Positions 5,101 to 64,000 are shown, counted from the first letter of the stretch. The stretch is DNA of 64,000 nt from Mobula hypostoma (GCF_963921235.1 NC_086101.1:31806001-31870000); one strand, 5' to 3'. Numbers and translations: made by a program. Notes: generated by a model from the sequence alone, not told the origin.

Positions 5101-5516
5101 CGGCCAGAACGACCGGCTGGGACGTCACCAGCAGCTGTGGGAGCCGCTCGAGGTCGGCCAGCCGCTCGCTCCGCACGGGGTAGGCGGACACGTTGATCAG
5201 CCGGAGCGGAGTGCCCCGGTATTTGACGTCTGCTACCAGGAGGCGCCCCGCAACCACCTCTTTAACTTGGGTGATTGAGAAGTTGCCTCCCCGCAGCAGA
5301 ACCCCCAGGCCAGAAGCGCGACCATCGTTGCCCCCCGACCACACCGACAAACCCTGGGACCACCACCGTGACCACCGTCGATAACTCCTGAGGTGCGGCA
5401 GACCGCACTCCTGCAGGAAGGTCACGTCGGCGTTCACGGTGTTCAAGTACCGAAGCGCGCTGACGCAACGTCCAGTACTTTTCACGAACGTTTAAGGACG
5501 CCATTTTAAGGTCCAT
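2134..5516 (-). pseudogene. Tx1 ORF2 (AP endonuclease, reverse transcriptase, C-terminal CCHC), disrupted
   Basis: ORF pieces 5516 (MDLKMASLNV), 4949-5485 (FLQE, GDFN), 4502-4867 (SDH) and 2134-4452 (PGSDG, QGCPLSP, YMDD, CPREEC..HLFAHC). Frameshifts near 5485 and 4500 and an in-frame TGA at 4949. Confidence 0.93.
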
Positions 5517-5523
5517 CACCTTT

Positions 5524-14239: not shown

Positions 14240-17200
14240 GCCCAAAAGTGACCATAATATGATAAGCTTCAATCTACAATTTGAGAGGGAGAAGGGAAAC
14301 TCGGAAGTGTCAGTATTACAGTTGAACAAAGGGAACTATGGTGCTATGAGGGAGGAGCTGGCCAAAGTTCAATGGAACAATACCCTAGCAGGGATGACAG
14401 TGGAACAGCAATGGCAAGTGTTTCTGGGAATAATGCGGAAAGTGCAGGATCAGTTCGTTCCAAAGAGGAAGAAAGATCCTAAGGGGAGTAAGGGGAGGCC
14501 GTGGCTGACAAGGGAAGTAATGGACAGTATAAAAATAAAAGAGAAGAAGTATAACATAGCAAAGATGAGTGGGAAGCCGGAGGATTGGGAACTAAAAAGG
14601 CAATATGCGGAGAAAAAATAAGGTATGAAGGTAAACTAGCCAAGAATATAAAGGAGGATAATAAAAGCTTCTTTAGGTATGCGAAAAGGAAAAAAATATG
14701 TAAGACCAAAATTGGGCCCTTGAAGACAGAAACAGGTGAATTTATTCTGGGGAACAAGGAAATGGCAGATGAGTTGAACAGGTACTTTGGATCTGTCTTC
14801 ACTAGGGAAGACACAAACAATCTCCCAGATGTAATAGTGGCCAAAAGACCTAGGGTAATGGATGAACTGAAGGAAATTTATATTAAGCAGGAAATGGTGT
14901 TGGATGGGCTGTTGGGTCTGAAGGCTGATAAGTCCCCGGGACCTGATGGTCTACATCCCAGGGTACTTAAGGAGGTGGCTTTAGAAATTGTGGGTGCATT
15001 GGTAATCATTTTCCAATGTTCTATAGATTCAGGATCAGTTCCTGTGGATTGGAGAGTGGCTAATGTTGTCCCTCTCTTCAAGAAGGGAGGAAGAGAGAAA
15101 ACAGGGAATTATAGATCAGTTATCCTGACGTCAGTGGTGGGAAAGATGCTGGAGTCAATTATAAAAGATGAAATTACAACACATCTGGATAGCAGTAACA
15201 GGATTGGTCAGAGTCAGCTTGGATTTATGAAGGGAAAATCGTGCTTGACTAATCTTCTAGAATTTTTTGAGGATGTAACTCTGAAAATGGACAAGGGAGA
15301 GCTAATGGATGTAGTGTACCTGGACTTTCAGAAAGCCTTTGATAAAGTCCCAAATAGGAGATTAGTGGGCAAAATTAGGGCACATGGTATTGGGGGCAGA
15401 GTACTGACATGGATTGAAAATTGGCTGGCTGACAGAAAACAAAGAGTGGCGATTAACGGGTCCCTTTCGGAATGGCAGGCGGTGACCAGTGGGGTATCGC
15501 GGGGTTCAGTGCTGGGACCGCAGCTGTTTACAATATATATTAATGATTTAGATGAGGGAATTAAAAGTAACATTAGCAAATTTGCCAATGACACAAAGCT
15601 GGGTGACAGTGTGAAATGTGAGGAGGATGTTATGAGAATGCAGGGTGACTTGGACAGGCTGGGTGAGTGGGCAGTTGCAGTTTAATGTGGATAAATGTGA
15701 AGTTATCCACTTTGATGGCAAGAACAGGAAGGCAGATTATTATCTAAATCAGCGGTCCCCAACCACCGGGCCGCGGACCAGCACCGGGCCACAAAGCATG
15801 TGCTACCGGGCCGCGAGGAAACGATATGATTTGGCGATATGTGTCAGCTACACCTTTCCTCAGTCCCTGTCACGCACACTGTTGAGTTTGAACACATGCG
15901 AGGTCATTACCCTGGTGTCATCTATGTCAGCACGGGAAGGAGATCAACTCCTCGAGCTTGCAAATGACAGCGGGCTGAAAAATATGTTTGACATAACATG
16001 TCTGCCGGCATTTTGGATCAAAGTAAAGGCTATATATCCTGATATGGCCATGAAAGCACTGAAAACGTTGCTTCCATTTCCAACCTATCTCTGCAATGAA
16101 TGCAACGAAAACTAACTTGCGGAATAAACTGGACATAAGGAACTCCCTTCAAGTATCGCTGTCTCTCGTCACCCCTCGATAAGACCGTCTTGTCGCAGGG
16201 AAACAAGCCCAGGGCTCCCACTGATTCAGCGATATTGGTGTGTTGCAATGATTTTATATGTTCATACGGGGAAAATATGTGCTGTGTGTTTAATATTAAA
16301 TTCATTAGATAAACCCTTTTAGAAACGAAATTGAGTGTATTAGCCACTTATCACCTATATTCCAGTTGCGATTAACACCCCCCCCCCGCCGCCGCCAACA
16401 GAATTGGCAAAAACAATTTTTAAGAAATTGGCACGTAAACGTATGCACAAGTTACGCAAGGCTTCATGGTCATTGTAGTCTTTCTCGTGGTAAACCCAAC
16501 GTATTTGACTGCTACTCTTGTACGTTGGCAACCCTACCAGCCCCCCACCCCCAGTCGGCCAGTCCGCAAGAATACTGTCCATGTGAAACCGGCCCGCGGT
16601 ACGACAAAGGTTGGGACCCCTGATCTAAATGGAGTCAGGAAAAGGGGAAGCACAATGAGATCTAGGTGTTCTTGTGCATCAGTCACTGAAAGCAAGCATG
16701 CAGGTACAGCAGGCAGTGAAGAAAGCTAATGGCATGCTGGCCTTCATAACAAGGGGAATTGAGTATAAGAGCAAAGAGGTCCTTCTGCAGCTGTACAGGG
16801 CCCTGGTGAGACCACACCTGGAGTACTGTCTGCAGTTTTGGTCTCCAAATTTGAGGAAGGACACTCTTGCTATTGAGGGAGTGCAGTGTAGGTTCACAAG
16901 GTTAATTCCCGGGATGGTGGGACTGTCATATGTCAAAAGATTGGAGCGACTGGGTTTGTATACACTGGAATTTAGAAGGCTGAGAGGGGATCTTATTGAA
17001 ACATATAAGATTATTAAGGGATTGGACACGCTGGAGGCAGGAAGCATGTTCCCGTTGATGGGTGAGTCCAGATCCAAAGGCCACAGTTTAAGAATAAGGG
17101 GTAGGCCATTTAGAACGGAGTTGAGGAAAAACTTTTTCACCCAGAGAGTGGTGGATATATGGAATGCTCTGCCCCAGAAGGCTGTGGAGGCCAAGTCTCT

Positions 17201-21593: not shown

Positions 21594-24500
21594 ATCCGAC
21601 TCGTTATCTTCACAACTCCACTTCCTGCGAGTCCCTTTTCCTCACCTACTGGTGTCTGGGCATCGCGGGCCGGTTCCTGTGCCCTGTAATGGCTGGGTTT
21701 TAGAATGCCCGGAGGTTGGTGACTCAAAGTTTTTTTGAGGGGATGGTTCCCATCACAAATAATGGCGCGACCGCACCGTCACACCAGGGGACCGGGGAAG
21801 GGACTAAACGGGCAGGGAGCAGTGTGTAGGCGATGAGGTAACTGGCGCCCGGAAAGGTGTTTCACGGAATAGACACCTGTGATCGGAGGCACAATGAGCA
21901 ACTCTGCTCCAGTTCACCAGCTGAATCTTGTCACTGCAGCCTCAGGTGCATGTCCATCTCCCCTATAATGCCTATAGTGCTCCCTCTCTGCACACGATCT
22001 GGCACATCTCCCTCAGACCACCTCTTCCTCACTTAAACTCCACGATCATTCATGTCTTTTCAAGGCTGCGGATAGATTTTAAATTTTAGGAGAACCAGAC
22101 AACATGGGGCCAGGAATTAATGATGGGGAATTCTAAAATGGCAGAGGTTCTACCTTGATCTCACTGGCAGATCGCGGAAAACATCTCAATAATGGAATCT
22201 TCATCACGAGAAGCAAGGTATAAGGCAAACTATTTTGGGGCAAAGGTAAGTACCCAGGATATGAGGGTCTGTATCCTGGGCTCCCGAAGCACATCGCTGT
22301 AGAGTCAATGATTCACCAAAATTCCCTGGATTCTCCGGAGAGGTCCTAGAGCATTGCAACACCACCATTCAAGGAAGGAGGGAGAGAGAAGTGGGAGCCT
22401 GTAGATCAGTTACTGGGAAAATACTGGACCAGCATCAGGACACTTAGAAAAAAGGCAGAATCAATGTGACTTTATGAAAAGGAAATTGTGTTTGAGAACA
22501 TTTGTCAGACATTTGTGAGGATAGATAGGGGGTCCAATGATATACTGTTTCTGGGTTTCCGGATGCTCAGTATAAAAACTTCCTGCACAAGACATCACAG
22601 GGTTAGCGGTGACAGATCATCTTGGAGAGAGCGGTGGGAGTGTAACAGAGGACAGAGAGCCGTGATCAGTTAAACTGGTGAGTGTTCACAGGGGCTGAAA
22701 CCTCTGATGCTGATGATGTGAATGCAGGGACTGAGTGCATTGTAGCCCGATCTACTGGTGATACACAGATATGTGGGGCAGCACGATGCAAGGGGGGCAC
22801 GAAGAGGGATATGGAGAGGAGAGGTGAGGTGAATGGGCAAGGTGTTGGCAGGTTGAACGTAAGGAAGGGAAAACCTGAGTTTACTGACTAGCGAGGCGGG
22901 AGGTGGGGGTGGGGATGAAAAGACAAGTTTCCATAAACGCCGCCTGGCCTGCTGAGTTCCTCCAGCACTTTGTGTGCGTTGCTCAGTTTTCCAGCATCTG
23001 CAGATTTCCTCTTGTCTGGGATTGAACTCTGGCAGGGTGTTTTCCCAGGGTAGGGGTGGGGGTGAAGGAGATCTGGAAATAGTGAGCAGAGTCCCGGAAT
23101 GATGCCTGTATCATGCGGCTGTGAGGTAGAATTCCTTCCCTCCGCGGGGTGAGGGAGGGGCGACTTTCGAAATCTCACCCCCAGGGAGTGGTGGAGGCAG
23201 AGTCGGTCAACACCTTCAAGTTGGAGACTGACAGATATCGAAACTGCATGGCGGTCGAGGGGTCCGGGGAGACCACAGGAAGGTGGTGTGGAGGCCAAGG
23301 TCGAATCAGCCAAGACCTTTTTGGAGTGGCAGAGCAGGCAGGAAGGGCCGAATGGTCTGACACTGGCCCACATCCTTGTACAGACAGAACTGGAAAGGCC
23401 GAATGGACAGTCCTGGACAATATCGTTGCACAAACAGCCATGGAGGGTCGGGTGATGAATGGGAAGAGCACTTGGTTACCTGATCCGTTCCAGGCTGGAC
23501 ACCGGGGACGGGCAGAGTCAGTGACCACAAGGAGCTGAACAACGAACAGGGGCGGGGTAAATCCCCGTTCAGCAGCCGGGCACACCTGGGGAGGAGGTGC
23601 TGGAGTGGGGAGCAGTGGGCCTCGGGAGGGGTTGGGTGGTGTGGTGACAGGGTAATCGAGGTGGAAGTAGTGAGGGGAAACAGGAGCGAGGAGACCAGGA
23701 TGGGAAGACACGTTTAAAGAGGGAAGGGTCACTATGGGCTCAGAGTGAGAATAATATCTAAAAGAAAATGAGTGAAGTTGTTAATGGGACAGAGACATAT
23801 GGCAAGATTTGGAAATACATATCCTGGTAATATATTCATTTTTAAACAATACTTTTTATCAGGTGGATCTCTCCAACAATTCAACAGCTAAATCCTTACA
23901 ACACCGATTACATTCCAAGTAGACAGTTAGCACCTTATACACCAGGGAGTGGTGATCTGGACGCAGTGTCCCCAGGTAACTGCACACCATAACAACACTG
24001 ACGCAGTGGCCTTTAGCAAATGCCACGCACTGAAAGAAGCTGCCTGTGATGCTGCGTGAGACTTCAGCACACCTGAGTCACCCTCAGACCCAGTTCATGG
24101 CGAGCAGGAGGCTGCCATCCCCAGAGAGCAGCGAGCAGGTAAAGAGGGGGCCAAACCCGGCAGAGTGCTGTGCACAGGGTGCCGCTTCAGAGCAGGGCAG
24201 CGGGCCGCTGATCGCTCCACTGGGCGAGGGTAGCGCAGGGGGTCGGAGATAGGGCTGCGCGTCGACCTTTGGAAAGGGCTGCTGGAGGGGGGAGCGAAGT
24301 GAGGAACTGAGAGCAGCGCAGACACTGTGGACCAATCTCTCGCATTCTCAGAATCAGTAACCGGGCACAGTCCGACTCCGGGCATGAACGGAGATCACAG
24401 CGGACGGCTGTGAGCTGAATATTACATCCCGGTGGTAGATGCGTGACGACACATTCCAGTGTGCAGAGTGACGAGGCAGTGGGATCAACTTAAACAGAGG

Positions 24501-24789: not shown

Positions 24790-25600
24790 CAGTCGCCATC
24801 TTCCCCGCTGTGCTTTGTCTGATGTTGTAACAAGTATCTAAAACTCTTGAACCTCTTTTGGCACAGGGCTGACTGAAAGGCTTTCTCCTCAGCGTGATGC
24901 TGCGTTAGATTACTGGACGTGTAAAAGCACTTTCTGCGCACTGAACATGCAAAAGGCCTCTCCCCAGTGTGGATGTGTGAAATCTCTTCTCACACACTGC
25001 GCACCTGGGCCTCTTCTCCCCGGTGTGAACCCGTTGATGCTCGATCAGGTAACCAGACCGGGAAAACCGCTCCCCGCACACAGTCCATTCGAAAGGCTTC
25101 TCTCCGGTGTGAATCTTCTGATGCTGGGTCAAAAGACTGGAGGTAGAGAACCGCTTTTTACACGCAGCACATTCAAACGCTTCCCCATCCGCCTGGACCT
25201 GCTGATGTTGGATCAGATTACTGGACGTGTGAAATCTCCTCGCACGCACGCTACATTCACACGGCTTCTCGCCCGTGTGAATCTGCTCGTGTTTGCTCAG
25301 GTCACAAGCTCTGTAGAACTTCCTTGAGCACAGAGCACAGGCAAACGTCTTCTCGCCGCTATGAATTTTCCGTGTTGAATAGGAGTACTGGATGTGTGAT
25401 TTCTCTTCCTGCAGACGATGCACTCGAAAGGCTTCTCTCCGGTGTGAACCCCCTGGTGCTTGGTGACCTCGCTGGAGGAGTGAAACCGCACCTCGCAAGA
25501 GGCGCACTCGAAAGGCTTCTCCCCGCTGTGGATGCGCAAGAGCGTGTCCAGCGAAAGCGCTTCCCGCACGCGTGGCACGGCGAGGCGTCCCCGCACCGAC
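24790..25600 (-). pseudogene. C2H2 zinc-finger array (about 10-11 fingers), frameshifted
   Basis: HSGEKPF/HTGEKPF linkers are spread over ORFs 25359-25733, 25297-25596, 24905-25636 and 24669-24941 in different frames. Several fingers lack Cys or His (CSVR, WTVC, HQQVQ). Confidence 0.85.
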
Positions 25601-26307
25601 TGCCCAGGAACTGCCGGCTGCAGTCAGCTGCTCCACCGGCTCTCTGCATAATCCTCGTCAGTGTTTCGCGTTTGTTTCGTCTTGTCCTGTAATCCATTCT
25701 CTGCAGCCCGGGATGTCTCCCAGACAAGAGCAAAAGGAATCAGTGATCAGCTGGGAATGTCGGGAAAACCGGTTTCGGGGAAAGGGATTCAGTGAGGAAA
25801 GGAACACACATCAAAGTTGCTGGTGAACGCAGCAGGCCAGGCAGCATCTGTAGGAAGAGGTGCAGTCGACGTTTCAGGCCGAGACCCTTCGGTGAGGTAA
25901 GGGATTATTTACGTGAGCTGGCATAGACAGAGGAAGGCCGATTGGCCTTCTCCATCATATAAAATTATGATCTGACTGTAACCTTAAACCCATAAGCCTG
26001 TCCATCTGTTCACCCCCTGCTAGTCACGTATCTACTCACTTCTGTCTTTAAAAAGATTCAAAGACTCTGCATACACTGGTCTTTACCAAGATCATAACTC
26101 TCTGACAGAAAGACACGATAGCTTTTCGCTCTGCCTCAACCGGCTGACCTCATAGTTTTAAACACTGGCCCTTGGTCCTAGATTCGAGGAAGGTGATTCT
26201 AGATTCAAAAGGGAATACAAGTTGGGGGCACAAGACACTGCGGGTGCTGGAAGTGGGCAGCACTGTGCAAAGTGCTGGAGGAACTCAATGTGTCTGGCAG
26301 CGTCTGT

Positions 26308-28749: not shown

Positions 28750-29805
28750 TAACCACACAAAAAGTGAGACCTTGCTCTTCGGCAACTGACCCAGCCGATC
28801 CTGTACCCCCTTCACGGTCCGGTGCTGGGGATCTGGTTTGGAGGGGCTGAGTTGGGCAAAGAATTGGCTGCAGTGACTGGGAAGGTGAAGCAGAAATTGG
28901 GTCTGCGGGGAAGATGCTCCCTATCAATAACTGGGAAGACTCTGGTCATCAGGTGTGAGGTGCCCTCAGAGCTGATGTACTTGGTCCCTTGCTCCTCCAG
29001 CTTGGGAATCACTTGAGCTGCCTTCAGGGAATCCAAGGTGGAGGAAGTAAAACAGGTCAGTGCACAAGTCCATGGACACTGCGGACAAAAACATACCAAT
29101 GGCACCCTGACCCTGATGACCCCCTTCATGAATGGTTGCATCAGGCTGTGTGTGGAACCGAGGAAGTGAGCATCAAGTTCCACTATGTGCCGAGGATCTA
29201 CCTGTCCCGTGTTGCGAAGATGTTGCCGGCCTAGTTGTCCTTATTAGCTCAGTACTTTTTTAAATTTCTGTTTTTGCATTACTTACTTAATTTAACTATT
29301 TTTATATATAAAATATAAATTTACTGGGATCTTGTTTTTTTCCCGATATTATCATGTATTGCATTGTACTGCTGCCGCAAAGTTAACAAATTTCACGACA
29401 AATGCTGGTGACTCTGATACTGAATTACTCCAGCCCGTCACCTTTGACTACAAGGCCATCAGCATGGGTCAGCACAGAGCTTCTCGAAAACGCTGCAGGG
29501 AAAGGACTCGATGGACACGGCGGGGTGGCTTCCTGAGCAGACGGTCGGAACCATCTGGCTCACTGCCAGATCCCACCGGCAGATAGCGTGAACTTGCCTG
29601 GCATGCAGTGAGAGGGGTCCTCCCAGACTGTTCCCTCCTGCTTGTCCGGTTCGTCACTCCTGCTGTGCGCTGCCCAAGGGACGATGGAGGTGAGGTTTGC
29701 AAAGAGGGTGTGAAGAAAGATGCGAGGGCCTGTGTCACAGTAGTTCAACCCAAGTGTCGCAGAGGACTCTCTGCCGTACAGGCTGTTCCCAAGGACGGAC
29801 GGAGG

Positions 29806-42684: not shown

Positions 42685-43129
42685 CTGGAATTGGAGCAGA
42701 GAGTCAGGGAGGCCTCGAGACCCCGAACCCCATGATCAGGGTCCGAAAAACCAGGGGGGGCCCGTGGTATAACTCTGAACCCCCGAGTAAATCAGGGTCT
42801 CCATCGCAACTGACCCCTCACCCAATGAGCCATGTGAGTCCCACCTGGAGACAGCTGCAGTTTCCTGGATGACCTGCGTTGTGGGGTCCATGGAACACGA
42901 CATGTTCAGCAGGGCCGGATGGGTTAAATCACTCTCTGTCTCTCTGAGCTCTGTGAGGGCGATTGAAGCACAGAAGCGAGACCAGAGGGCGAGCGCCAGC
43001 TGCCTGTCTTTTGGTCGGTTACTCTGTACCTGAGAGGGAAAGGCTTGCTCCTGTATCCGGCCCAGAAGAGTATTGTCCAGGTTTCTCTGTGCTCTTTGGA
43101 TTTGGACTTTGGACTAATCTCTGATCTTC

Positions 43130-49499: not shown

Positions 49500-51000
49500 C
49501 TTCAAAGTTCAAAATTCAAAGTAAATTTATATCTGCATATACAACCCTGAGATTCATGTTCTTGTGGGCGTTTACAGCAAATGCAAAGAAGCACAGTAGA
49601 ATCAATGAATAACCAGACCCAACAAAAAGGACAATCAATTTGCATAAGACAACAAACTGTGCAAATGCAAAAAGAGAAAAATAAAATAATAATAATAAAC
49701 AATAAATATCAAGAACATGAGATGAAGAGTGGCTGAGCATTAAGTCCATCGGTTGTGGGAGATGTTCAGTGATGGGGTGAATGAGGTTATGCCCGGTGGT
49801 TCGGGAGCCTGAGAGTTGAGGGGAAGTAACTGTTCCTGAACCTGGTGATGTGGGCCCTGAGGCTCCTGACCCTCCTTTCTGATAGCAGCAGCAAGAAGAG
49901 AGCACAGACTGGATGGTGAGGGTCCTTCCCGGTGGATGCTGCTTTCCTGTAACAGCACTCCATGTTGATGTGATCAATGGGAGGGCTTTACTGTGTTGGA
50001 CTGGGCCTTATCCACTATTTTTGTAGTCTTTTCCCTTTAAGGCATTGGTATTTTCATACGAGGCCATGATATAACCAAACAATATACTCCTCCACCACAC
50101 GCCTACAGAAGTTTGTCGAAGTTTTAGATGGCATGACGAATCTTTGCAAACTTCTAAGAAAGTAGAGGAGGTGCTATACTTTATCTGCAATGGTACTGAT
50201 GTGCTGCACTCAGTACAGATCCTCTGAAATGGTAACACCGAGGAATTTGAAGTTGCTGAGCCTTTCCACCTCTGATTCCCCGATGAGGACCGGCTCATGG
50301 ACCGTGGGTCTCCTCCTGCTGTAGCCAATAATCAGATCTATGATCTTGCTGACATCGAGAGGTTGTTGTCGTGGCACTAGTCAGCTAGGTTTTCAGTCTC
50401 CCTCCTATATGCTGATTTGTCACCATCTTTGGTTCGGCTAACAACAGTGGTTTTATCGCCAAAGTTAAAAATGCATTGGAGCTGTGTTTAGCATCACAGT
50501 TCATAAGTGTAAAGTGAGTAGAGCAGGGGGCTAAGCACACAGCCTTGTGGTGCACCCGTGCTGACAGTGATTGTGGAGGAGATGTTGCTAATCCGAACTG
50601 ACTGGGGTCTGCATCTGAGGAAATAGTGGATCCAGTTGCACAGGAGGTATTAAGACTTAGGTCATGAAGCATATTGATTAGTTTTGAGTGGGTGATAGTA
50701 TTGAATGCCAAGCTAAAGTCAATAAAAGACATCCTAGTGTATACATCTCTGTTGTCCATATGTTCCAGGATTGAGTGAAGAGCCAATGAAATGGTATCTG
50801 CTGTTGACCTCTTGCAAGGGTGGGCAAATTGGAGCAGATACAAGTCACTTCTCAGACAGGAGTTGATGTGCTTCATCACCAACATCTCAAAGCACTTCAT
50901 CACAGTGGATGTCATTGAAGCAGGTTACCGTGTTTTTCTTAGGCACTGCTTGAAGCAGGCGGTAACCTCAAGAAACAAGAGGTTAACATTATAAGTGAAT
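49500..51000 (-). mobile_element. Rex1/Babar LINE RT and 3' end
   Basis: ORF 50385-50915 (TSTVMKCFE..QFA..RSTADTI..FIDFSLAFNTI). Confidence 0.85.
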
Positions 51001-54199: not shown

Positions 54200-55210
54200 G
54201 GTAGGGAGTAATCCCTCCAACCTGCCTCAGTAACTGTACTCCAGTGGGAGAATAGTCAAGCTGAGGACAAGAACTACCGGGCCTGACCAGATGTCAACCA
54301 GAGTAAGTGATGTTGGTGTTTGGGATCAGGCTGCTGGAATGCCCTGGATTCAGGGTGAGGCGGTCTATCTCTCACTGCTGCCCAAATATGCTGCAAGTGC
54401 TGGTCATTCCTCAGCCCTGTTTGGCTGCATTCAGTCCAGATGTGCTCAGTAGTGGGGAGGACTTCACCTGTGATGGACTGGGCCATATCCACTACTTGTT
54501 GTAGCATTTTCCACTCAAGGGCATTGGTATACTCATATCAGGCTGTGATGCAGCCAGTCAATATACCCTCCACTATAGAGGTTATAGAGGTTTGTCAAAG
54601 TCTTAGAGGTCATGCTGAATCTTCGTAGAGGTGTCTCTGTACTTTCTTCGCAGTTGGACTTCAGTGTTGGGCCCAGGACAGGTCCTCCAAAATAATAACA
54701 TAGGGGAGTTTAATGTTGTTCAGCCTTTCCACCTCTGATCCTCCGATGAAGGCTGGCTAATGGACCTCTGGTTTCCTTCTCCTGAAGTCGATAATCAGCT
54801 CCTTGATCTTGCTGACACAGTGTGTGGCACCACTCATCCAGATTTTCAATCTCCTGCCTATATGATGATTCGTCACCACCTTTAATTCGGCCTACAGCAG
54901 TGGTGTCATCAGCAAACTTGAATATGGTATTGGAGCTGTGCTTAGCCAGACAGTCATATGTGTAAAGCGAGTACAGCAGGGGGCTAAGGACACATCCTTG
55001 TGGAGCACCTGTGCCGATGGAGATTGTGGAGGAGATGTTGTTGACAATTCAAAGTGACTGGGGTCTGCAAGTGAGGAAATCGAGGATCTAAATGCACAAG
55101 GAGATATTGAGACCAAGGTCTTGAAGCTTATTGATTAGTTTTGAGGGGATGATGGTATTGAATGATGAGCTGTAGTCAGTAATAAGCATCCTGATTTTAA
55201 CTTCAGGGAT
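54200..55210 (-). mobile_element. Rex1/Babar LINE fragment
   Basis: [23 protein letters not shown] and downstream RT remnants. Confidence 0.8.
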
Positions 55211-57322
55211 TTTAAATTCAAGGAAATCTGCTGTGTGAGCAAACTGGAACAGCCCCAGTCTCAGTAATGAACCCTGCACAAGAGGATTGTCAGAAATCAG
55301 TGTCTGTGATCTCCAGGGAGGTGAAATGACATGATTGCACTAGACAGGGTGCAGAAGTTCACAAAAATGTTGTCTGGGGTGGAGCAGTGTGGCTGTAAAG
55401 GAGAGAATTGATAGCCCCTTTGGAGTGGAGGATGCTGAGGGGAGACCTGATAGAGGTACAAAATTATTACAGGCAAAGACAGGGTAGTCCATATGTGAAA
55501 CCTTCCCCATGGCAAACATGTCTGAAACTAGAGAGATGGGGTTCGGGCAACGGTGAAGAGGGGATATGGGGAAGAATTTTCACACAGGCAGTGGGGGGGG
55601 GGTGGTGGTTGGAATGTGGGACACACCCCCTGATGGGGTGGTGGAGGGAGAGAATCTCACAATATTTAAGAAATACCCAGACAAGCATTTGAGTCAGCAA
55701 GGCAGAGAAGGTTGTGGACGAAGTGTCTGTGAGTGGGAATAACATAGATGGGTCATTGATGGTCAGCATGGACACAGGTCCACCGAAGAACGCATTTCCA
55801 TGCTGTAGGACTGTGGGGTAGCCAGCAGACTCTGGACACTTCGCCACCAAACAACAAATCTCACAACATATGCCAGTGATATTAAACTTGATTCAAATGG
55901 TGCAATTAAACAATTCCTTGACTTCCACCCTCACATAAGGTAACATAAACATGGTCTTTGTCAGCTCTCTGCCTGGTCACTGTTGCCCCAGCAGTAACCA
56001 CTCCTTGTGTTTTCTCACCCACCCGCCCACAAAGGCAGCCCCTCCCTCACTCTTAGGCAGCATGGAGCTGGACTAAGTATCAGCCAGCACCTCTTTAAAT
56101 CCCTGCCACACATCACTCCCACTTTGTCCAGAGACCTGGTGGCTGCATCCTTCAAATCCCAATGTTCCCAACACCACAATCTTTTGCAGTCAGGAAGATG
56201 GAGTACATGTCGACTTTATTTGGATTCAGTATTAAAGAGCCTTGACAGTAAAGCACAAACAAACACTTCCCTCCCTACCTCCCACTCCCCCGGCATAAAA
56301 GTCACATTTCCAGATCTCCCTGTGATCACCCCCACAGCCCATGGGTCAAAGTGACACCTTAACTCCAGGACCTACCACCCACTCCCCTCCCATCCCACAG
56401 GGGCCAGAAGCCACTCTCGGTCAACAGTCAAATTGACTGAATGAGCAAATCTATTCACCCAGCTGTGAGTCTCCAGATGCTGACCAGGACTGAGCTGTGG
56501 GTCACAGCTGTTCCGCACTAAACCCCTTCACTTCATCCCAAACACATTAAAGTGATTCAGCTTTCAGCTTTCTATGAAAAGCAGCATTATAGTCTGGCTC
56601 CTGCAGTGAATCAGCAAATTATCAGTATTCCCAAGCATGTGGGTCAATGCCCAAATCAAAGGTTAACTCGTTAATCATCCGAAGCCCCAGGATTACATTC
56701 TGTTCCCCTTGATCTCTTCATCAACATCTTGCTGTGAATTGAATTTTCTGCAGAGAGGGAGAGAGATGAGGAGAGATAGTTATAGAGTGAGGCAAACCCA
56801 CAGAGACATCAACAACAAAGCTCCCCAACACTGACAATAAAACCCACCGAAATGCCCCACCCATCACTGGGAATAATATCCAGCGATTCCCAGTTCCCAA
56901 CAACTACTGCAATATAATCTAGACACGGAACCCATCCTGCACCACACCACACCCATAAAAAACCCATCTTCCCCAGCACCATAAACCCCCCACAACAACC
57001 CACCCTCCACACCCCCGACTTCCCCCTACAACACCTGAGCACACCCCTGGCCACAAAACACCAGTGGGGGGCAACCCTGGGAAGAAACAGCATTTCCAGT
57101 GACAAACTTCAGGAAAACTGGGCACTGGATCCTTGGAATGGAACGGAGCAGGAGGCCATTCCCAGGGTGAGGTGCTGTGGGGACTGGTTACAGCCCATCC
57201 CACAGTTCTGGTTCCGGACCGGGGTTTCTCAGTGCCCAGACTGTGCTGTAATGACCAGCTTCAGCTCCAGTGACAAGAGCTGGGAAGCCCAGCATTGACC
57301 AGAGCCCAACACGGTTCCTACC

Positions 57323-57369
57323 TCAGGCCATGGCAGAGGAGTTGGAGGAGGATTCTCCTTTGTCAGAAG
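57323..57369 (-). CDS. MHC class I locus 2 last coding exon (TSDKGESSSNSSAMA*)
   Basis: ttcacag| acceptor, TGAG|gtagga donor; the 3'UTR exon acceptor is at 56747, paralogous to 30755. Confidence 0.88.
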
Positions 57370-57621
57370 CTGTGAATGGAAGGACAGGCAGGAAAATATT
57401 TACTACCAATGCAGTGCAGACACGGAGAAACAAAGACAGCCACATGCACACCATACACCACTGCACAAACACAGGTGTATACAGATAATCACACATACCG
57501 ACAGAGACATGCACAAAGGTGTTGCACATACACACACGTGGAACCCCTGTTCTATTGAAGAAACCCAGTGAACATGAACAATGTCACACAACCATCCAGC
57601 TGTGATTTATAGTGAACATAC

Positions 57622-57651
57622 TTTTAGTTGGATTGTAGCCATTGTCCCCGG
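57622..57651 (-). CDS. MHC class I locus 2 cytoplasmic exon (AGDNGYNPTK)
   Basis: tttttcag|...|gtatgt, 30 nt, GYNP motif. Confidence 0.88.
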
Positions 57652-58740
57652 CTGAAAAACACAGACAGATGGTGAGAACGGTCCCACATCCCCAGCATAT
57701 AAGCATTGGCAGGAGATCCCAATCAAACAGAACTCATGGTACAAGTTGTGAAAGGAGACACATCCAACAGGATCACCAGGTGCCCGAACTCATTGTAAGG
57801 CCATGAGACGGAACAAAGCTGGAGTGTGACAGAGTGGTCAGTGGGAGGTTTGGAGTGACCATTTACCCTAATACTGACCCTGACCCTGGTCAGGTTCACC
57901 AGGTATGGATGCACACGGTAATGAGAGGCTCAGGTGGGGCAGGTAGGAGGAACTGATTTCCCGGAGCAGAGGAGTCCAAGATCAGAATCTGTCAGTGAGG
58001 AGCAAGATCACTGGAAGTGACCAGAGGAAGGAATGGTTCACCCAAACCCAGAGGGTGGCTGGAATCAAACACACTGAAGAAGTGGAGAAGGCAGACTCGC
58101 ATATCACTGAGGATAGATCTAGACAGGTATATGAATAACCAAGATAGAGATGGCAAGGAAATGGGATCAGACATGCAAATATGTGATCATTAATGAGAGG
58201 TCAGGCCGAAGGAACTAATTCCATACAGTCTGACTCGCTGACTCTTGCACTGGGGGAAAGTAGAGCACAAAGTTACAGTTAGTCTATGAGATGATAAGAG
58301 GCAGAGATAATGTGGACAACCAGCTTTTGCCTTAACCAGGAAGCAACGCCTAATACCAAAGAACATCTTTTTAAGGTGATTGCAGAAAGTGTCGGGGCGA
58401 TGTCAGAGGGGAGCATGGGACACTGCTGTGGTCGTGATGGAGACTGACACATTAAGGACAGTTCAGAGACTCTTAGTTAGGCACATGGATGAAAGAGAAA
58501 TGGACAATTTGTGAGAGGGATGTGTTAGATTGACCGTGGAGTGGGTTAAGAGGTCAGCACAATTTTGTGGGCCAAAGGGCCAATACTGTGCTATACCGTC
58601 CTGCTCCATGACCCTACAGAGAGAGGCCAAGACAACACGGATACTGTTATAATGGGAGAAGGAAAAGTGGTGGGGAATTGTGGGGTGAAGATGGGTGACA
58701 TTGGATGCCCAAGTACCGCACAACCAGTGGTGTTTCTTAC

Positions 58741-59004
58741 CGAGGAACAGGACGAGGGGCTCGGGGAGACCCCGGTGTTCCACCCGACAGGAGAACTTTG
58801 CTGTGTCCGTGGGCTCCACCCGCACCGTCCTGGTCAGCTGGTAGGTGTTGTCGTGATTGGGGAGGATCCCGTGGGAATGGGTCTCCTCCAGGATCCGGCC
58901 GTTCCGCAGAATAGTCACGTCGATGGACTGAGGGTAGAAGCCAGTAGCCACACAGGAGAGCTGGCGGCCGGCCTCGGAGGCGGTGAACGAGACTTCAGGG
59001 GGAT
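58741..59004 (-). CDS. MHC class I locus 2 alpha3 exon (downstream module)
   Basis: 264 nt, open, ccccag| and |gtaaga. Confidence 0.93.
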
Positions 59005-59203
59005 CTGGGGTGGGAGAGAAAGAGGAAGCATTGAGTGGAGGTAGGAAGGGGATGGGAAGAGGAGACTGCGTGGGGGGTGTTGCAGAGGAGGTGGCGGGGC
59101 TGGTGAAGGCGGCAAGGGGTGGGCAGGGGAGGGTGGAGATGGGGGTTGCAGACACTGACTTCCACTCCCTGGCATACACATTGACCCCACCCCACGCACT
59201 CAC

Positions 59204-59476
59204 TGGGTTCAAGGTGACTCCCCCCGGCCTTGACATATTTCATCAGCCATTCGATGCAGGTGTGCTCCAGGTATCCCTTCCAACCCTGGTTCATGGCCAT
59301 GTCCCGGTCCCACTTGTTCTTAGTGATGATACCCCAGGGCACAGGGGTCACCCACACCATCCGGTCCTTGTCGAAGAGGATGAAGTCTGACCCGTCCCAG
59401 CCGTACTGCAGGAACCCGGCAGTGGTCCCGTCGTCACGGAGCTCACAGCCGGACATCCTCTGGAGAAAGTGGATCC
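59204..59476 (-). CDS. MHC class I locus 2 alpha2 exon (downstream module)
   Basis: GIHFLQRMSGCEL..DFI..TKNKW..GYLEHTCIEWLMKY; 273 nt, splice sites intact. Confidence 0.94.
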
Positions 59477-59559
59477 CTGGAACACATCATCCATTGGCGA
59501 GTTGTGGGGCTGTGGACAACTTTCCATCCTGCAGATGTGGCTTTTATTTCCACTCCCCC

Positions 59560-61100
59560 AGGCAGAACCAATATACACCCCACACGTTCCCCCACCGTTC
59601 ACAATCCCTACTGTCACCGCTGAACAGACCCCACCATCACTTCTTCACCGCAACCCACCATTGACCCATCCCTACCATCACCTTCCATGTCACCCCTCAC
59701 CTCCAACACGGTCCCCACCCACATCCTACCATCACTCTCTCTCCCCACCACTGCATCTGACTCCTGCCCCGTCTCTAACATCACCCCACCCCTCCCCACC
59801 CTGTATGATCTCTACTATCAGCCCCAAGACAAAACCTACCATCACATCCGTCTCCAAAATCCCCACTGTCACCCCCCCACAATCCCTGTCATCCCACCAC
59901 CACAAATCCTTATGTCACGCCCACCAGCCCTACAATTCCCACCACACCCCACCCCATATGGTCCCTAACATCACTCCCTCCCCCCTCACACCCGCACTCT
60001 CCCCCATCACCTCCCACACCACTGCACATTCCCTATCATCACCCCCTCATTCAAACATTCTTTATTGTCAACACCCTACCCCCACACTGCCCCTACTCTC
60101 ACCCCCACACCCGCTCAAAACCTACCATCAACTGTCACCCCCACACGATCACCATTGTCACCCCCGCCAGCCCCACAATACCTAACATCACCCCTGCCAC
60201 CCCTTGCAAAATCACTGACGACACCCACACCATCCCTCCCAGAGCCCCCTGTGCATCCCCATGATCGTTAACGTCACCCCTGCACAACCGCATGATCCCT
60301 AACGTCACCCCTGTACACACCCAGGATCACTAACTTCACCTCTGTACATCCCCATGCTCACTAACGGCACCCCTGCACACCCCCATGATCACGAATGTCA
60401 CCCGTGTACACTCCCAAGATCACTAACGTCACCCCTGTACACCCCCATGATCACTAACGTCTCCCCTACCATCCCCAACAATCCCCAACACCCCGTCACC
60501 ACAATTTCTAATGTCATCCCTGCCATCCCTCCCACATACCCTAACATCACCCCTGCACCCCACAATCCCTAATGTTGCCCCTGCTAACAACCACCATCCC
60601 TCACTTCACAGTCCACAATCCCTAACGTCACCTCTACCACCCCCCCATGATCCCTAACGTCACCCCTGCTGTCCCCCACAATCCCCAACAACACCCCTCC
60701 AACCCCAAGATCCCTAACATCACCCCTGCCATACCCAACAAAGCCCAACAACACCCCTGCCACCCAATCCCTAATGCCATCCCTGCCACCTTTCCCATGT
60801 GCCCTAACGTCACTCCTGCCACCCCACAATCCCTAATGTCACCCCGGCTAACACCCACCATCCCTCACTTCACAGCCCACAATCGCTAATGTCACAGCCG
60901 GCACCCCCACCTCAGTCCATTGCATGACCCCCACCCAATCACTACCATCATCTCCACCACCCCACAAACCCCACCGTCACCTTCCACACCCCTCCCCACC
61001 CCACCATCTCTACCATCAGCTCCCCCAACCACCGAAACCGTGCCTGCCATCACCCACCTAATCCCCACAACTGTGTGTTCCCCTCTGCCACCCCTCCCCG
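59560..61100. repeat. C/A-rich degenerate minisatellite in intron 2 with recurrent CCCTAA
   Basis: Units such as atccctaacgtcacccctg recur many times between 59960 and 60890; strong C over G skew. Repeated again at 63230-64000. Confidence 0.9.
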
Positions 61101-61120
61101 CAGCATGGTTCCCCACTCAC

Positions 61121-61381
61121 CACTCGTCTGGTTGGTCCGGTACATGAGGGTCTGGATTTCGGCCTGGGCCCACTGCTCATCGCCCTGAGAGATCCTTGTC
61201 TCCCGTTCCCAGTAGTCAGGTCCCTGAGTCTCCGCCATCCACTGCTGACGGGGAACCGACCGTCTCAACTCACTGTCGTAGTAACTGATCAACAACTCAT
61301 CCACATACCTGACGGTAATGAACTCAGGGACCCCCGACCCCGGGGTCACCGCCGTGGAGAAATAACGGAGAGAGTGAAAGC
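61121..61381 (-). CDS. MHC class I locus 2 alpha1 exon (downstream module)
   Basis: GFHSLRYFST..DYWERETR..RTNQTS; 261 nt; ttccag| and |gtgagt. Confidence 0.94.
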
Positions 61382-62388
61382 CTGGAACTGGATCTGAGAG
61401 TCAGAGAATAACTTATATCTGAAACCAGGACCCTGAGGCCCAAGATGCCGGGCTTCACCCCCAACCCCCTGAGAGAATCAGAGTCCTAAAACCAGAGAAT
61501 CAGGACTGTCCCCTCACCCCAAGGGGCATTTCAGCTGCACCTGAAGACAGTGAGAGTCCAAATCCCTGATCACATCTGCAGATCCCTGGCTGAGTTGCCT
61601 ATATCCATGAGCTGTGGTGTCCCAACCCGGTGATGGAGCGGGGTTATGAAACAAGACACGTTCACCCGGACCAGACTGGGTTCAATCATCAGTGTGTCTC
61701 TCTGAGCTCAGGGTAAGTTGCTCTGTGAGGATAGGGATGTGCTCAGTGCAGGTGGGAAAACTCCCAATCGGGGTGAGGACTCGTACGTGCTCCCTCCCTG
61801 GTTTAGTTTCTCCCTGCTGTCAGTGGAGAGACCAGCTGAGAACTGAGGTCAGGCCGAAGGAACTAATTCCATACAGTCTGGCCCGCTGACTCTTGCACTG
61901 GGGGAAAGTAGAGCACAAAGTTACAGTTAGTCTATGAGATGATAAGAGGCACAGATAATGTGGACAACCAGCTTTTGCCTTAACCAGGAAGCAACGCCTA
62001 ATACCGAAGAACATCTTTTTAAGGTGATTGCAGAAAGTGTCGGGGCGATGTCAGAGGGGAGCATGGAACACTGCTGTGGTCGTGATGGAGACTGGCACAT
62101 TAAGGACAGTTCAGAGACTCTTAGTTAGTCACATGGATGAAAGAAAAATGGACAATTTGTGAGAGGGATGTGTTAGATTGACCGTGGACTGGTCTAAGAG
62201 GTCAGCACAATTTTGTGGGCCAAAGGGCCAGTACTGTGCTATACCGTCCTGCTCCATGACCCTACAGAGAGAGGCCAAGACAACACGGATACTGTTATAA
62301 TGGGAGAAGGAAACGTGGTGGGGAATGGTGGGGTGAAGATGGGTGACATTGGACGCCCATGTACCGCACAACCAGTGGTGTTTCTTAC

Positions 62389-62652
62389 CGAGGAACAGGA
62401 CGAGGGGCTCGGGGAGACCCCGGTGTTCCACCCGACAGGAGAACTTTGCTGTGTCCGTGGGCTCCACCCGCACCGTCCTGGTCAGCTGGTAGGTGTTGTC
62501 GTGGTTGGGGAGGATCCCATGGAAATGGATCTCCTCCAGGATCCGGCCGTCCCGCAGAATAGTCACGTCGATGTACTGAGGGTAGAATCCAGTGGCCACA
62601 CAGGAGAGCTGGCGGCCATCCTCGGAGGCGGTGAACGAGACTTCAGGGGGAT
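62389..62652 (-). CDS. MHC class I locus 2 alpha3 exon (upstream duplicated module)
   Basis: 264 nt, open, splice sites intact; 10 nt differences from 58741-59004. Confidence 0.92.
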
Positions 62653-62874
62653 CTGGGGTGGGAGAGAAAGAGGAAGCATTGAGTGGAGGTAGGAAGGGGA
62701 TGGGAAGAGGAGACTGCGTGGGGGGTGTTGCAGAGGAGGTGGCGGGGCTGGTGAAGGTGGGAAGGGGTGGGCAGAGGAGGCGGCAAGGGGTGGGCAGGGG
62801 AGGGTGGAGATGGGGGTTGCAGACACTGACTTCCACTCCCTGGCACACACATTGACCCCACCCCACGCACTCAC

Positions 62875-63147
62875 TGGGTTCAAGGTGACTCCCCCCGGCC
62901 TTGACATATTTCATCAGCCATTCGATGCAGGTGTGCTCCAGGTATCCCTTCCAACCCTGGTTCATGGCTGTGTCCCGGTCCCACTTGTTCTTAGTGATGA
63001 TACCCCAGGGCACAGGGGTCACCCACACCATCCGGTCCTTGTCGAAGAGGATGAAGTCTGACCCATCCCAGCCGTACTGCAGGAACCCGGCAGTGGTCCC
63101 GTCGTCACGGAGCTCACAGCCGGACATCCTCTGGAGAAAGTGGATCC
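62875..63147 (-). CDS. MHC class I locus 2 alpha2 exon (upstream duplicated module)
   Basis: 273 nt, open; 3 nt differences from 59204-59476. Confidence 0.93.
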
Positions 63148-64000
63148 CTGGAACACATCATCCATTGGCGAGTTGTGGGGCTGTGGAAAACTTTCCATCC
63201 TGCAGATGTGGCTTTTGTTTCCACTCCCCCAGGCAGAACCAATATACACCCCACACGTTCCCCCACCGTTCACAATCCCCACTGTCACCGCTGAACAGAC
63301 CCCACCGTCACTTCTTCACCGCAACCCACCATTGACCCATCCCTACCATCACCTTCCATGTCACCCCTCACCTCCAACACGGTCCCCACCCACATCCTAC
63401 CATCACTCTCTCTCCCCACCACTGCATCTGACTCCTGCCCCGTCTCTACCATCACCCCAGCCCTCCCCACCCTGTATGATCTCTACTATCAGCCCCAAGA
63501 CAAAACCTACCATCAACCGTCACCCCCACACAATCACCATTGTCACCCCCGCCAGCCCCACAATACCTAACATCACCCCTGCCACCCCTTGCAAAATCAC
63601 TGACGACACCCACACCTACCCTCCCGCAGCCCCCTGTGCATCCCCATGATCGTTAACGGCACCCCTGCACAACCACATGATCCCTAACGTCACCCCTGTA
63701 CACCCCCATGCTCACTGTCACCCCTGTACATCCCCATGATCCCTAACATCTCCCTTACCATCCCCAACAATCCCCAACACCCCGTCACCACAATTTCTAA
63801 TGTCATCCCTGCCATCCCTCCCACATACCCTAACATCACCCCTGCACCCCACAATCGCTAATGTTGCCCCTGCTAACAACCACCATCCCTCACTTCACAG
63901 TCCACAATCCCTAATGTCACCTCTACCACCCCCCCATGATCTCTAACGTCACCCCTGCTGTCCCCCACAATCCCCAACAACACCCCTCCAACCCCAAGAT

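What the first reader, a model, noticed from the sequence alone, without database searches (positions are those of the whole stretch)
57323..64000. MHC class I gene with a tandemly duplicated alpha1-alpha2-alpha3 ectodomain, spliceable in frame
Seen: a 3648-bp head-to-tail duplication with breakpoints in intron 1 and in the intron after alpha3. Between the upstream alpha3 (62389) and the next alpha1 (61381) there is only about 1 kb of intron with no leader, TM, stop or promoter that I could find. All exons are phase 1-1 with intact GT-AG, so alpha3-alpha1 joins as ..LFL|GFHSLRY. Both alpha2 copies keep F123, T143, K146, W147, Y159 and Y171. The upstream alpha1 and leader would lie beyond 64 kb. 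Inference: a single-chain class I with two (or more) peptide-binding platforms, or an alternatively spliced cassette. I know of no such architecture for classical-type class I.
Basis: partly seen in the sequence, partly recalled or inferred. Interest (0 to 1): 0.8.

Follow-up and report, generated by a model that had tools for sequence, protein, structure and literature searches.

The report
Tandem-ectodomain, anchorless MHC class I gene
This devil-ray MHC gene places three complete class I antigen-presenting modules behind one signal peptide and has no membrane-anchor exon; manta, stingray and sawfish genomes hold the same layout, so it probably encodes a secreted multi-headed MHC molecule that I could not find described in the literature, although no transcript or protein has been seen yet.

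Summary
Window 58197-60711 and 61845-64000 are a head-to-tail duplicate (93-96% identical, sharp breakpoint at 58197/61845). It carries intact alpha2 and alpha3 exons twice and one internal alpha1. All exons are phase 1 with AG/GT, and no leader-like or transmembrane-like exon lies between the units.

The window is Mobula hypostoma. RefSeq already models this locus as LOC134346730 (XP_062904366.1, 838 aa): leader, three alpha1-alpha2-alpha3 cassettes, no transmembrane segment, then a 15-residue hydrophilic tail. The window holds cassette 3, most of cassette 2 and the 3' exons.

Single-leader, anchorless, multi-cassette models also exist in M. birostris (3 cassettes), Hypanus sabinus (2) and Pristis pectinata. 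I checked the Pristis locus on its DNA and found 3 cassettes. In Pristis, exons of two cassettes differ by 3.0% with no indels, against 7.7-9.4% and 44 gap events in introns, which indicates selection on the coding sequence.

Double-ectodomain models that I checked in perch and wall lizard are annotation chimeras; the ray loci are not.

Still missing is any transcript or protein evidence. The best reading is a secreted, multivalent, classical-type class I chain (about 0.6). Rivals are an inert unequal-crossover by-product or alternative cassette use. The neighbouring window's notes describe this same locus; the scan has nothing on other DNA.

The parts
63148..64000 (-). 3' part of intron 2 of cassette 2, cut by the window edge. 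It contains a 31-nt minisatellite at 63631-63747.
   Evidence: It is homologous to 59477-60711 of cassette 3.
62875..63147 (-). Alpha2 exon of cassette 2 (GIHFLQRMSGCEL...SHLEP), phase 1-1.
   Evidence: Pfam MHC_I matches profile positions 91-177 at E 7e-22. It matches XP_062904367.1 residues 284-375.
62389..62652 (-). Alpha3 (C1-set Ig) exon of cassette 2, ending ...PLVLFL with donor G|GTAAGA.
61382..62388 (-). Hybrid inter-cassette intron. 62388-61845 is the 5' part of the intron after alpha3, and 61844-61382 is the 3' part of intron 1. The duplication breakpoint is at 61845/61844. In-frame acceptor AGs lie at 61395-94, 61389-88 and 61383-82.
   Evidence: The breakpoint is shown. No leader-like or transmembrane-like ORF was found.
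61121..61381 (-). Internal alpha1 exon of cassette 3 (GFHSLRYFSTAV...TNQTS). The RefSeq model starts it at 61393, which adds the linker DPVP.
   Evidence: Pfam MHC_I matches profile positions 2-89 at E 3e-21. It is 100% identical to XP_062904367.1 residues 463-554.
59477..61120 (-). Intron 2 of cassette 3, with a 31-nt minisatellite (60246-60467 and 60613-60873).
59204..59476 (-). Alpha2 exon of cassette 3.
   Evidence: It differs from the cassette-2 copy at 3 of 276 nt.
58741..59004 (-). Alpha3 exon of cassette 3.
   Evidence: It differs from the cassette-2 copy at 10 of 264 nt, 4 synonymous and 6 non-synonymous.
57652..58740 (-). Intron after the last alpha3, the place where a transmembrane exon would be expected. 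None is present.
   Evidence: tblastn with conventional ray class I proteins found no transmembrane hit. The hydrophobic scan found nothing. The segment of the conventional Pristis gene that holds the transmembrane exon has no counterpart here.
57622..57651 (-). A 30-nt cytoplasmic-type mini-exon (AGDNGYNPTK) with intact AG and GTATGT. The RefSeq models of this gene skip it.
57323..57369 (-). Coding part of the last exon, (A)SDKGESSSNSSAMA followed by TGA. It is hydrophilic and offers no anchor.
   Evidence: It is homologous to the tail exon of the Pristis locus.
56215..56220 (-). The only AATAAA/ATTAAA found in the 2.3 kb scanned downstream of the stop codon. This is a candidate polyadenylation signal.
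   Evidence: by pattern only.

Best explanation
The window holds the 3' two-thirds of a real, MHC-linked class I gene of Mobula hypostoma, LOC134346730. The gene has one leader exon, three tandem alpha1-alpha2-alpha3 cassettes joined by hybrid introns (5' end of the post-alpha3 intron plus 3' end of intron 1), no transmembrane exon and a short hydrophilic tail exon.

Because every exon is phase 1 and every splice site is intact, ordinary consecutive splicing yields one 838-residue open reading frame. After signal-peptide removal the product would be a soluble chain of about 93 kDa carrying three classical-type peptide-binding platforms. Each platform would presumably pair with beta2-microglobulin.

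Shown here:
- the gene architecture and its intactness;
- the absence of leader and transmembrane exons between and after the cassettes;
- the retention of all peptide-terminus anchors;
- the same layout in three other batoids;
- coding-sequence constraint on the duplicated cassettes in Pristis.

Inferred only:
- that the multi-cassette mRNA is the main product;
- that the protein folds, loads peptide and is secreted;
- that its role is avidity-based engagement of TCR/CD8 or NK-type receptors by a natural multivalent peptide-MHC.
For: 1. Architecture and splice logic are established.

2. Window exons match XP_062904367.1 at 99-100%. Isoform X1, XP_062904366.1, is leader + 3 cassettes + tail with no transmembrane-like stretch. 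The gene spans 21,427 bp, and the next class I gene starts 8.3 kb downstream, which is exactly the leader I found at 49017.

3. Equivalent models exist in M. birostris (836 aa) and Hypanus sabinus (573 aa, with a conventional class I gene 8.4 kb downstream). The Pristis pectinata locus L001 has one leader, three cassettes with canonical splice sites, no transmembrane or extra leader exon, and a tail exon.

4. None of the 11 cassettes in the four species has a stop codon or frameshift.

5. In Pristis, cassettes 1 and 2 differ by 3.0% in 792 nt of exon with 0 indels. Their introns differ by 7.7-9.4% with 44 gap events in about 3.4 kb. Non-synonymous changes are 10 of 23 against about 70-76% expected (p 0.0007-0.007). 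Pairwise omega is 0.13-0.24.

6. Among about 150 retrieved class I proteins, the alpha1-helix motif EQWAQA occurs only in the Mobula and Hypanus multi-cassette proteins. LLISYY occurs only in their internal cassettes, plus M. hypostoma cassette 1. Mobula and Hypanus cassettes form a clade in the best tree. This supports an origin before those families split.

7. Each cassette aligns end to end with the crystallised nurse-shark classical class I 6LUP at 55-57% identity (E 5e-103), with the anchors, Cys pairs and NQT site kept.
Against: - No transcript or protein evidence could be reached. A search for alpha3-to-alpha1 fragments found only genome-annotation models and nothing from transcriptome assemblies.
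- RefSeq pipelines do build in-frame class I chimeras, because all exons are phase 1. Examples are Perca (a 177-kb model spanning TAP and proteasome genes), Podarcis (a skipped transmembrane exon, units 22 kb apart) and Hypanus P0004. The protein models alone therefore prove little.
- Within the window the two cassettes are too similar to show selection (13 exon differences, 8 non-synonymous, p 0.17-0.35).
- The junctions differ between lineages: DPVP or none in Mobula, an AGNKGYNPTK mini-exon in Hypanus, and a 10-codon extension of alpha3 in Pristis.
- A single clade of all multi-cassette genes is rejected (AU p 0.0004). Pristis cassettes group with a conventional Pristis gene. The layout is therefore either convergent or overwritten by gene conversion.
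- Gene conversion from functional paralogues could mimic purifying selection.
- Hemitrygon, skates and Narcine showed no such model among the hits.
Confidence: 0.6

Rival explanations
1. The locus is an inert by-product. A class I copy lost its transmembrane exon and became functionally dead or irrelevant, and unequal crossing-over then amplified its ectodomain exons. The open frame persists only because all exons are phase 1 and the copies are young or homogenised. The RefSeq proteins are mere concatenations.
For: - Cassettes cluster within each species and are 96% identical in the window.
- There is no measurable constraint between the two window cassettes.
- The junctions differ between lineages, and the Pristis gene groups with its own conventional gene.
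- Annotation pipelines demonstrably create chimeric class I models.
- No transcript evidence was found.
Against: - All 33 cassette exons in four species are intact, with canonical splice sites wherever DNA was available.
- In Pristis, exons are 2.5-3 times more conserved than introns, with 0 indels against about 10 expected at the intron rate, and omega is 0.13-0.24.
- Lineage-specific motifs shared by Mobula and Hypanus, together with the conserved synteny, imply long persistence.
- All peptide-anchor residues are retained.
Confidence: 0.22
2. The gene is a cassette-choice gene. One promoter and leader serve three alternative ectodomains, and splicing usually joins the leader to a single cassette and that cassette to the tail. 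The result would be several single-headed, anchorless class I proteins rather than a multi-headed chain.
For: - Any subset of cassettes is in frame.
- RefSeq lists isoforms that skip single exons or combine cassettes differently in both Mobula species and in Hypanus.
Against: - Skipping whole three-exon cassettes needs a dedicated mechanism, and consecutive splicing is the default.
- The cassettes are nearly identical (4-10 residue differences), so choosing among them would add little diversity.
- No isoform with only one cassette is among the retrieved models.
- Pristis internal cassettes carry a 10-codon extension exactly where a linker would be needed, and the last cassette lacks it.
Confidence: 0.13
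3. The duplication is an assembly artefact: a falsely duplicated or haplotype-merged class I gene.
For: MHC regions are prone to mis-assembly, and the window shows only two partial units.
Against: - The window has no N runs.
- The copies differ by 3-4.5% in introns, by a 23-nt indel and by minisatellite length.
- Three distinguishable cassettes are modelled in each of two Mobula assemblies. The same design is seen in the Hypanus model and, on DNA, in the independent Pristis assembly.
Confidence: 0.03

Closest known systems
Classical (UAA-type) elasmobranch MHC class I heavy chain, e.g. nurse shark 6LUP and conventional ray class I (XP models P0007, P0019)
   Same: - Each cassette is a complete alpha1-alpha2-alpha3 ectodomain, 55-61% identical to these proteins.
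- The exon phases are the same.
- All peptide-terminus anchors, both disulfides and the N-glycosylation site are present.
- The locus is MHC-linked, with class II genes 250-410 kb away according to scan notes.
   Different: - It has three ectodomains in one reading frame instead of one.
- It has no connecting-peptide or transmembrane exon.
- The alpha1 helix carries a lineage-specific EQWAQA motif.
Naturally soluble class I molecules: mouse H2-Q10 and HLA-G5/G6 (from my own knowledge, not tested here)
   Same: They are class I chains with a signal peptide but no functional membrane anchor, and are therefore secreted.
   Different: Those are single-headed, and they lose the anchor by a transmembrane-exon mutation or by intron retention. 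Here the transmembrane exon is absent from the gene and the ectodomain is triplicated.
Engineered peptide-MHC multimers and single-chain class I constructs (e.g. PDB chimeras 2QRI, 6APN listed)
   Same: They carry several class I parts, or several pMHC units, in one soluble reagent. Multivalency raises avidity for TCR/CD8.
   Different: They are man-made. The single-chain constructs link peptide, beta2m and one heavy chain, not heavy-chain ectodomains in series.
RefSeq computational models XP_062904366.1 (M. hypostoma), XP_072115023.1 (M. birostris), XP_059826596.1 (H. sabinus) and XP_051899585.1 (P. pectinata)
   Same: The first is this very gene, and the others are its counterparts. All are leader + 2-3 cassettes + tail without a transmembrane segment.
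   Different: They are unnamed predictions ('uncharacterized protein', 'hereditary hemochromatosis protein homolog'). The Pristis model uses only parts of the three genomic cassettes. I found no publication on them.
Multi-unit class I gene models in teleosts, lizards and frogs (e.g. Perca XP LOC120571311, Podarcis P0094)
   Same: The predicted proteins join alpha3 directly to a second alpha1.
   Different: The two I checked are chimeras of separate genes. The Perca model spans 177 kb across TAP and proteasome genes. The Podarcis model skips a transmembrane exon right after unit 1, and its units lie 22 kb apart. The ray loci have no such exons between cassettes.

Membership tests
MHC class I heavy chain (ectodomain) | Alpha1/alpha2 peptide-binding platform (Pfam MHC_I) followed by a C1-set Ig alpha3 domain | tested here: met
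   PF00129 matches at E 3e-21 to 7e-22 and PF07654 at E 2e-12 to 4e-14 on the window exons. There is a full-length match to 6LUP.
MHC class I heavy chain (ectodomain) | Conserved disulfides (alpha2 C101-C164 and alpha3 C203-C259 equivalents) and an N-glycosylation site at the end of alpha1 | tested here: met
   C98, C162, C197, C252 and N84-Q-T are invariant in all cassettes.
Classical-type (peptide-presenting) class I | Invariant residues that hold the peptide termini (human Y7, Y59, Y/R84, T143, K146, W147, Y159, Y171) | tested here: met
   All eight are present in the three M. hypostoma and three M. birostris cassettes. Hypanus has H at position 7.
Classical-type (peptide-presenting) class I | Type I membrane protein with connecting peptide, transmembrane and cytoplasmic exons | tested here: not met
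   No transmembrane exon is found by tblastn or by the hydrophobic scan anywhere in 57323-64000. The RefSeq protein has no transmembrane-like stretch. The neighbouring gene does have one at about 41300.
Classical-type (peptide-presenting) class I | High polymorphism, ubiquitous expression, beta2m and peptide-loading-complex dependence | not testable with these tools
   No population, expression or biochemical data were accessible.
Secreted (anchorless) class I, as in H2-Q10 or soluble HLA-G | Signal peptide present, no membrane anchor, no GPI-type hydrophobic C-terminus | tested here: met
   The leader MVLRLLLLALLCGGVSA is in XP_062904366.1, outside the window. The C-terminus ASDKGESSSNSSAMA is hydrophilic.
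Secreted (anchorless) class I, as in H2-Q10 or soluble HLA-G | Protein demonstrably secreted | not testable with these tools
   This needs expression or plasma proteomics.
Single-transcript tandem-ectodomain class I (the proposed new variant) | No leader, promoter-proximal exon or transmembrane exon between cassettes, with splice-competent hybrid introns | tested here: met
   for the window. for Pristis.
Single-transcript tandem-ectodomain class I (the proposed new variant) | mRNA that actually joins alpha3 of one cassette to alpha1 of the next | tested here: inconclusive
   Only RefSeq predictions show the joint. No transcriptome-derived fragment was found.

The most novel reading that the evidence does not exclude
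Batoids make a natural, secreted, multivalent peptide-MHC class I: two or three classical-type peptide-binding platforms in one polypeptide, each with beta2m. The design would be maintained by selection in Myliobatiformes and would have arisen again, or been kept through gene conversion, in sawfish. It would act as a high-avidity soluble ligand for TCR/CD8 or NK-type receptors, for example in tolerance, decoy or feto-maternal roles in these live-bearing fishes.
Probability: 0.4. Interest if true: 0.85.

Novelty: new variant of a known kind. Interest (0 to 1): 0.68.

Why it matters
Every textbook MHC class I heavy chain has one peptide-binding platform and is usually membrane-bound. A germline-encoded chain with three classical-type platforms and no anchor would be a new way of using the class I fold. 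Immunologists build pMHC multimers artificially to gain avidity, and this molecule would be a natural counterpart.

It would raise three testable questions. How do three platforms load peptide and beta2m in the ER? Which receptor reads a soluble multivalent pMHC? Why did rays keep or re-invent the design?

It is also a practical warning. Similar-looking models elsewhere are annotation chimeras, so genomic inspection is needed to tell them apart.

Tried and rejected
- **Transcript evidence.** A word-indexed search with the Hypanus alpha3-alpha1 piece returned only single-unit proteins. An exhaustive HMMER search with the Mobula alpha3-linker-alpha1 piece returned only genome-annotation models. 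Neither settles the question.
- **Fetching the Mobula and Hypanus loci.** This failed. The isoforms are not on record, or the assembly files are too large. The cassettes beyond 64 kb, and dN/dS between the two Mobula species, could therefore not be examined on DNA.
- **AlphaFold2 of a two-cassette segment.** With a 7-row alignment the mean pLDDT was 47.9. The model is unusable and no fold search was run.
- **Shared junction or deletion breakpoints between Mobula and Pristis.** Introns are not alignable at this distance. Only exons, the mini-exon region and the tail exon align, so a common origin of the duplication or of the transmembrane-exon loss is neither shown nor excluded.
- **Stem-branch dN/dS in Pristis by parsimony.** There were too few changes to say anything: 3 synonymous and 12 non-synonymous, against 3 and 10 on the conventional branch.
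- **Literature.** Six full-text searches found nothing on tandem-ectodomain class I or on Mobula MHC. The library lacks most subscription journals, so this is not proof of absence.
- **Rejected idea 1.** I considered that the Pristis DLPEPIPQLH extension comes from the transmembrane exon. It looks instead like a tandem repeat of the last 10 codons of alpha3 (GLPEPLILLR then DLPEPIPQLH), followed by the normal donor.
- **Rejected idea 2.** I considered that double-headed models in other vertebrates are precedents. The two I checked are chimeras.

Full report
**What is in the sequence**

A self-comparison of 50-64 kb shows one strong direct repeat. The matches are 58197-59879 with 61845-63554 (95.9%), 60116-60365 with 63501-63747 (92.8%), and 60339-60711 with 63631-64000 (93.6%). 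The repeat runs off the window edge. The window contains no N.

The repeat ends abruptly at its 3' end. The two copies are identical up to ...GGCCTGACCTC (58197/61845) and unrelated after that.

Translating the minus strand shows MHC class I exons:
- an alpha1 exon at 61381-61121;
- alpha2 exons at 63147-62875 and 59476-59204;
- alpha3 exons at 62652-62389 and 59004-58741.

Each exon has an AG acceptor and a GT donor and sits in phase 1. Pfam confirms MHC_I and C1-set domains.

The 1005 nt between the upstream alpha3 and the internal alpha1 hold no leader-like ORF. The only leader in the window, MSRLLLLVLLCGGTSAG at 49017, belongs to the next gene. The interval also holds no transmembrane-like hydrophobic ORF.

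The alpha1-proximal part of this interval is homologous to intron 1 of the neighbouring class I gene (61646-61709 ~ 42890-42951). The interval is therefore a hybrid intron made of the start of the post-alpha3 intron and the end of intron 1.

**Downstream of the last alpha3**

No transmembrane exon exists below 58741. tblastn with conventional ray class I proteins finds none. The hydrophobic scan finds none, although it does find the neighbour's at about 41300. The stretch of a conventional sawfish gene that carries the transmembrane exon has no counterpart here.

Two features remain:
- a 30-nt mini-exon, AGDNGYNPTK at 57651-57622, with both splice sites intact;
- the last exon, (A)SDKGESSSNSSAMA plus stop, at 57369-57323.

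**Whose gene it is**

A protein search placed the exons among batoid class I sequences. XP_062904367.1 of Mobula hypostoma (LOC134346730, isoform X2) matches the window exons at 99-100%.

Its longest isoform is XP_062904366.1, 838 aa. Its layout is:
- a leader;
- cassette 1;
- the linker DPVP;
- cassette 2;
- the linker DPVP;
- cassette 3;
- the tail ASDKGESSSNSSAMA.

It has no hydrophobic segment after the leader. The called gene spans 21,427 bp, so the leader lies about 14.7 kb beyond the window. The next gene (336 aa) begins 8.3 kb downstream, which coincides with the leader at 49017.

The window therefore holds all of cassette 3, cassette 2 without its alpha1, and the 3' exons. The DPVP linker arises because RefSeq uses an AG 12 nt upstream of the canonical acceptor. 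Three in-frame AGs, 6 nt apart, precede alpha1.

**Other species**

Equivalent anchorless, single-leader models exist in M. birostris (836 aa, three cassettes, plus four exon-skipping isoforms) and in Hypanus sabinus (573 aa, two cassettes). In Hypanus isoform X1 the cassettes are joined through an AGNKGYNPTK mini-exon. A conventional class I gene lies 8.4 kb downstream there, as in Mobula.

For Pristis pectinata the DNA was available (L001). It has one leader, three cassettes with canonical splice sites, and no other leader-like or transmembrane-like ORF. Its mini-exon donor is mutated from GT to TT, and a tail exon follows. Cassettes 1 and 2, the ones followed by another cassette, end alpha3 with a 10-codon extension that cassette 3 lacks.

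Four independent assemblies with the same design make an assembly artefact very unlikely.

**Are such models trustworthy?**

Not by themselves. Many vertebrate annotations contain multi-unit class I models. The two I checked are chimeras:
- the perch model spans 177 kb across TAP, a proteasome subunit and several class I genes;
- the wall-lizard model skips a transmembrane exon that sits right after its first alpha3, and joins units 22 kb apart.

The ray loci are different. The DNA between cassettes contains nothing to skip.

**Function or debris?**

Within the window the two cassettes are too alike to tell. Alpha2 differs at 3 of 276 nt and alpha3 at 10 of 264 (4 synonymous, 6 non-synonymous). 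Introns differ by 0.5-4.5%.

The sawfish locus is informative:
- Cassettes 1 and 2 differ by 3.0% over 792 exon bases with no indel.
- Their introns differ by 7.7-9.4% with 44 gap events in about 3.4 kb, so about 10 indels would be expected in the exons at that rate.
- Only 10 of 23 lineage-specific changes are non-synonymous, against 70-76% expected (p 0.0007-0.007).
- Pairwise omega is 0.13-0.24.

None of the 11 cassettes in the four species is broken. All Mobula cassettes keep the eight residues that hold peptide termini, both disulfides and the glycosylation site. Hypanus has H at position 7. Each cassette aligns end to end with the nurse-shark classical structure 6LUP. The caveat is that gene conversion from functional paralogues could import pre-filtered variation.

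**History**

In a maximum-likelihood tree the cassettes cluster by species, even between the two Mobula species that both have three. This indicates concerted evolution.

Mobula and Hypanus cassettes form a weakly supported clade (50/87). Forcing all multi-cassette genes into one clade is rejected (AU p 0.0004), because the Pristis cassettes sit with a conventional Pristis gene that lies 1.2 Mb away.

Two motifs argue that the Myliobatiform gene and its first-versus-internal cassette distinction predate the Mobula-Hypanus split. EQWAQA occurs only in Mobula and Hypanus multi-cassette proteins. LLISYY occurs only in their internal cassettes, plus M. hypostoma cassette 1, while the first cassettes of M. 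birostris and Hypanus have EEQI.

The sawfish version is either an independent invention or has been homogenised with local genes. Either way the design recurs.

**Mechanism proposed**

Consecutive splicing of phase-1 exons gives a single secreted chain with three near-identical, classical-type platforms. The cassettes differ at only about 4-10 residues. This points to multivalency rather than diversity, that is, a soluble high-avidity ligand for TCR/CD8 or NK-type receptors. This step is inference.

**What could not be done**

No RNA or protein data were reachable. DNA for the Mobula and Hypanus loci could not be fetched. AlphaFold2 on a shallow alignment failed, with a mean pLDDT of 47.9. 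Six literature searches found no description of such a gene.

**Verdict**

The gene is a new variant of a known kind. It is already present as unnamed RefSeq predictions but, as far as I could find, undescribed. Confidence that it makes a multi-headed secreted protein is about 0.6, and interest is 0.68.

Noticed in passing
window 49017-30400, minus strand: A conventional class I gene (336-aa RefSeq product) lies immediately downstream. Its leader is at about 49017, alpha1 at 42685-42425, alpha2 at 42283-42008, alpha3 at 41835-41563 with a 3-codon insertion (GKFSKFSC), and a transmembrane exon at about 41300. Regions homologous to the cytoplasmic and tail exons lie at about 34.4-34.8 kb and 33.3-33.7 kb. 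Intron 2 is only about 140 nt, but intron 1 is about 6.3 kb. It clusters with Hemitrygon P0010 and M. birostris P0005, apart from the multi-cassette clade.
   Followed up: partly
window 60246-60895 and 63631-63747: A 31-nt C-rich minisatellite (unit about CCCCTGTACACCCCCATGATCACTAACGTCA) sits inside intron 2 of both cassettes. Its length difference explains why the repeat offset falls from 3648 to 3289 nt.
   Followed up: partly
window 2134-7185, minus strand: An apparently intact LINE. ORF1 (553 aa) has ZCCHC3-type RNA-binding domains and zinc knuckles. ORF2 (772 aa) has reverse-transcriptase and zf-RVT domains. A further reverse-transcriptase fragment lies at 14585-15685 (+).
   Followed up: partly
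window 24905-25636, minus strand: A 243-aa ORF with C2H2 zinc fingers. I did not examine whether it belongs to a gene or to a repeat.
   Followed up: no
window 50000-50735 and 54477-55192: A direct repeat of about 740 nt at 75% identity lies between the two class I genes. It is probably an interspersed repeat.
   Followed up: no
L001 (Pristis pectinata) 22257-22295 and 28973-29011: Alpha3 of cassettes 1 and 2 carries a 10-codon extension, DLPEPIPQ(L/V)H, that looks like a tandem copy of the exon's last 10 codons. The last cassette lacks it. It may act as an inter-cassette linker.
   Followed up: partly
Hypanus sabinus protein P0004 (no locus DNA): This RefSeq isoform has a transmembrane exon and a cytoplasmic mini-exon between alpha2 and alpha3, and again after alpha3. 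It is either another partial duplication or a chimeric model, and it shows how freely phase-1 class I exons are concatenated by annotation.
   Followed up: no
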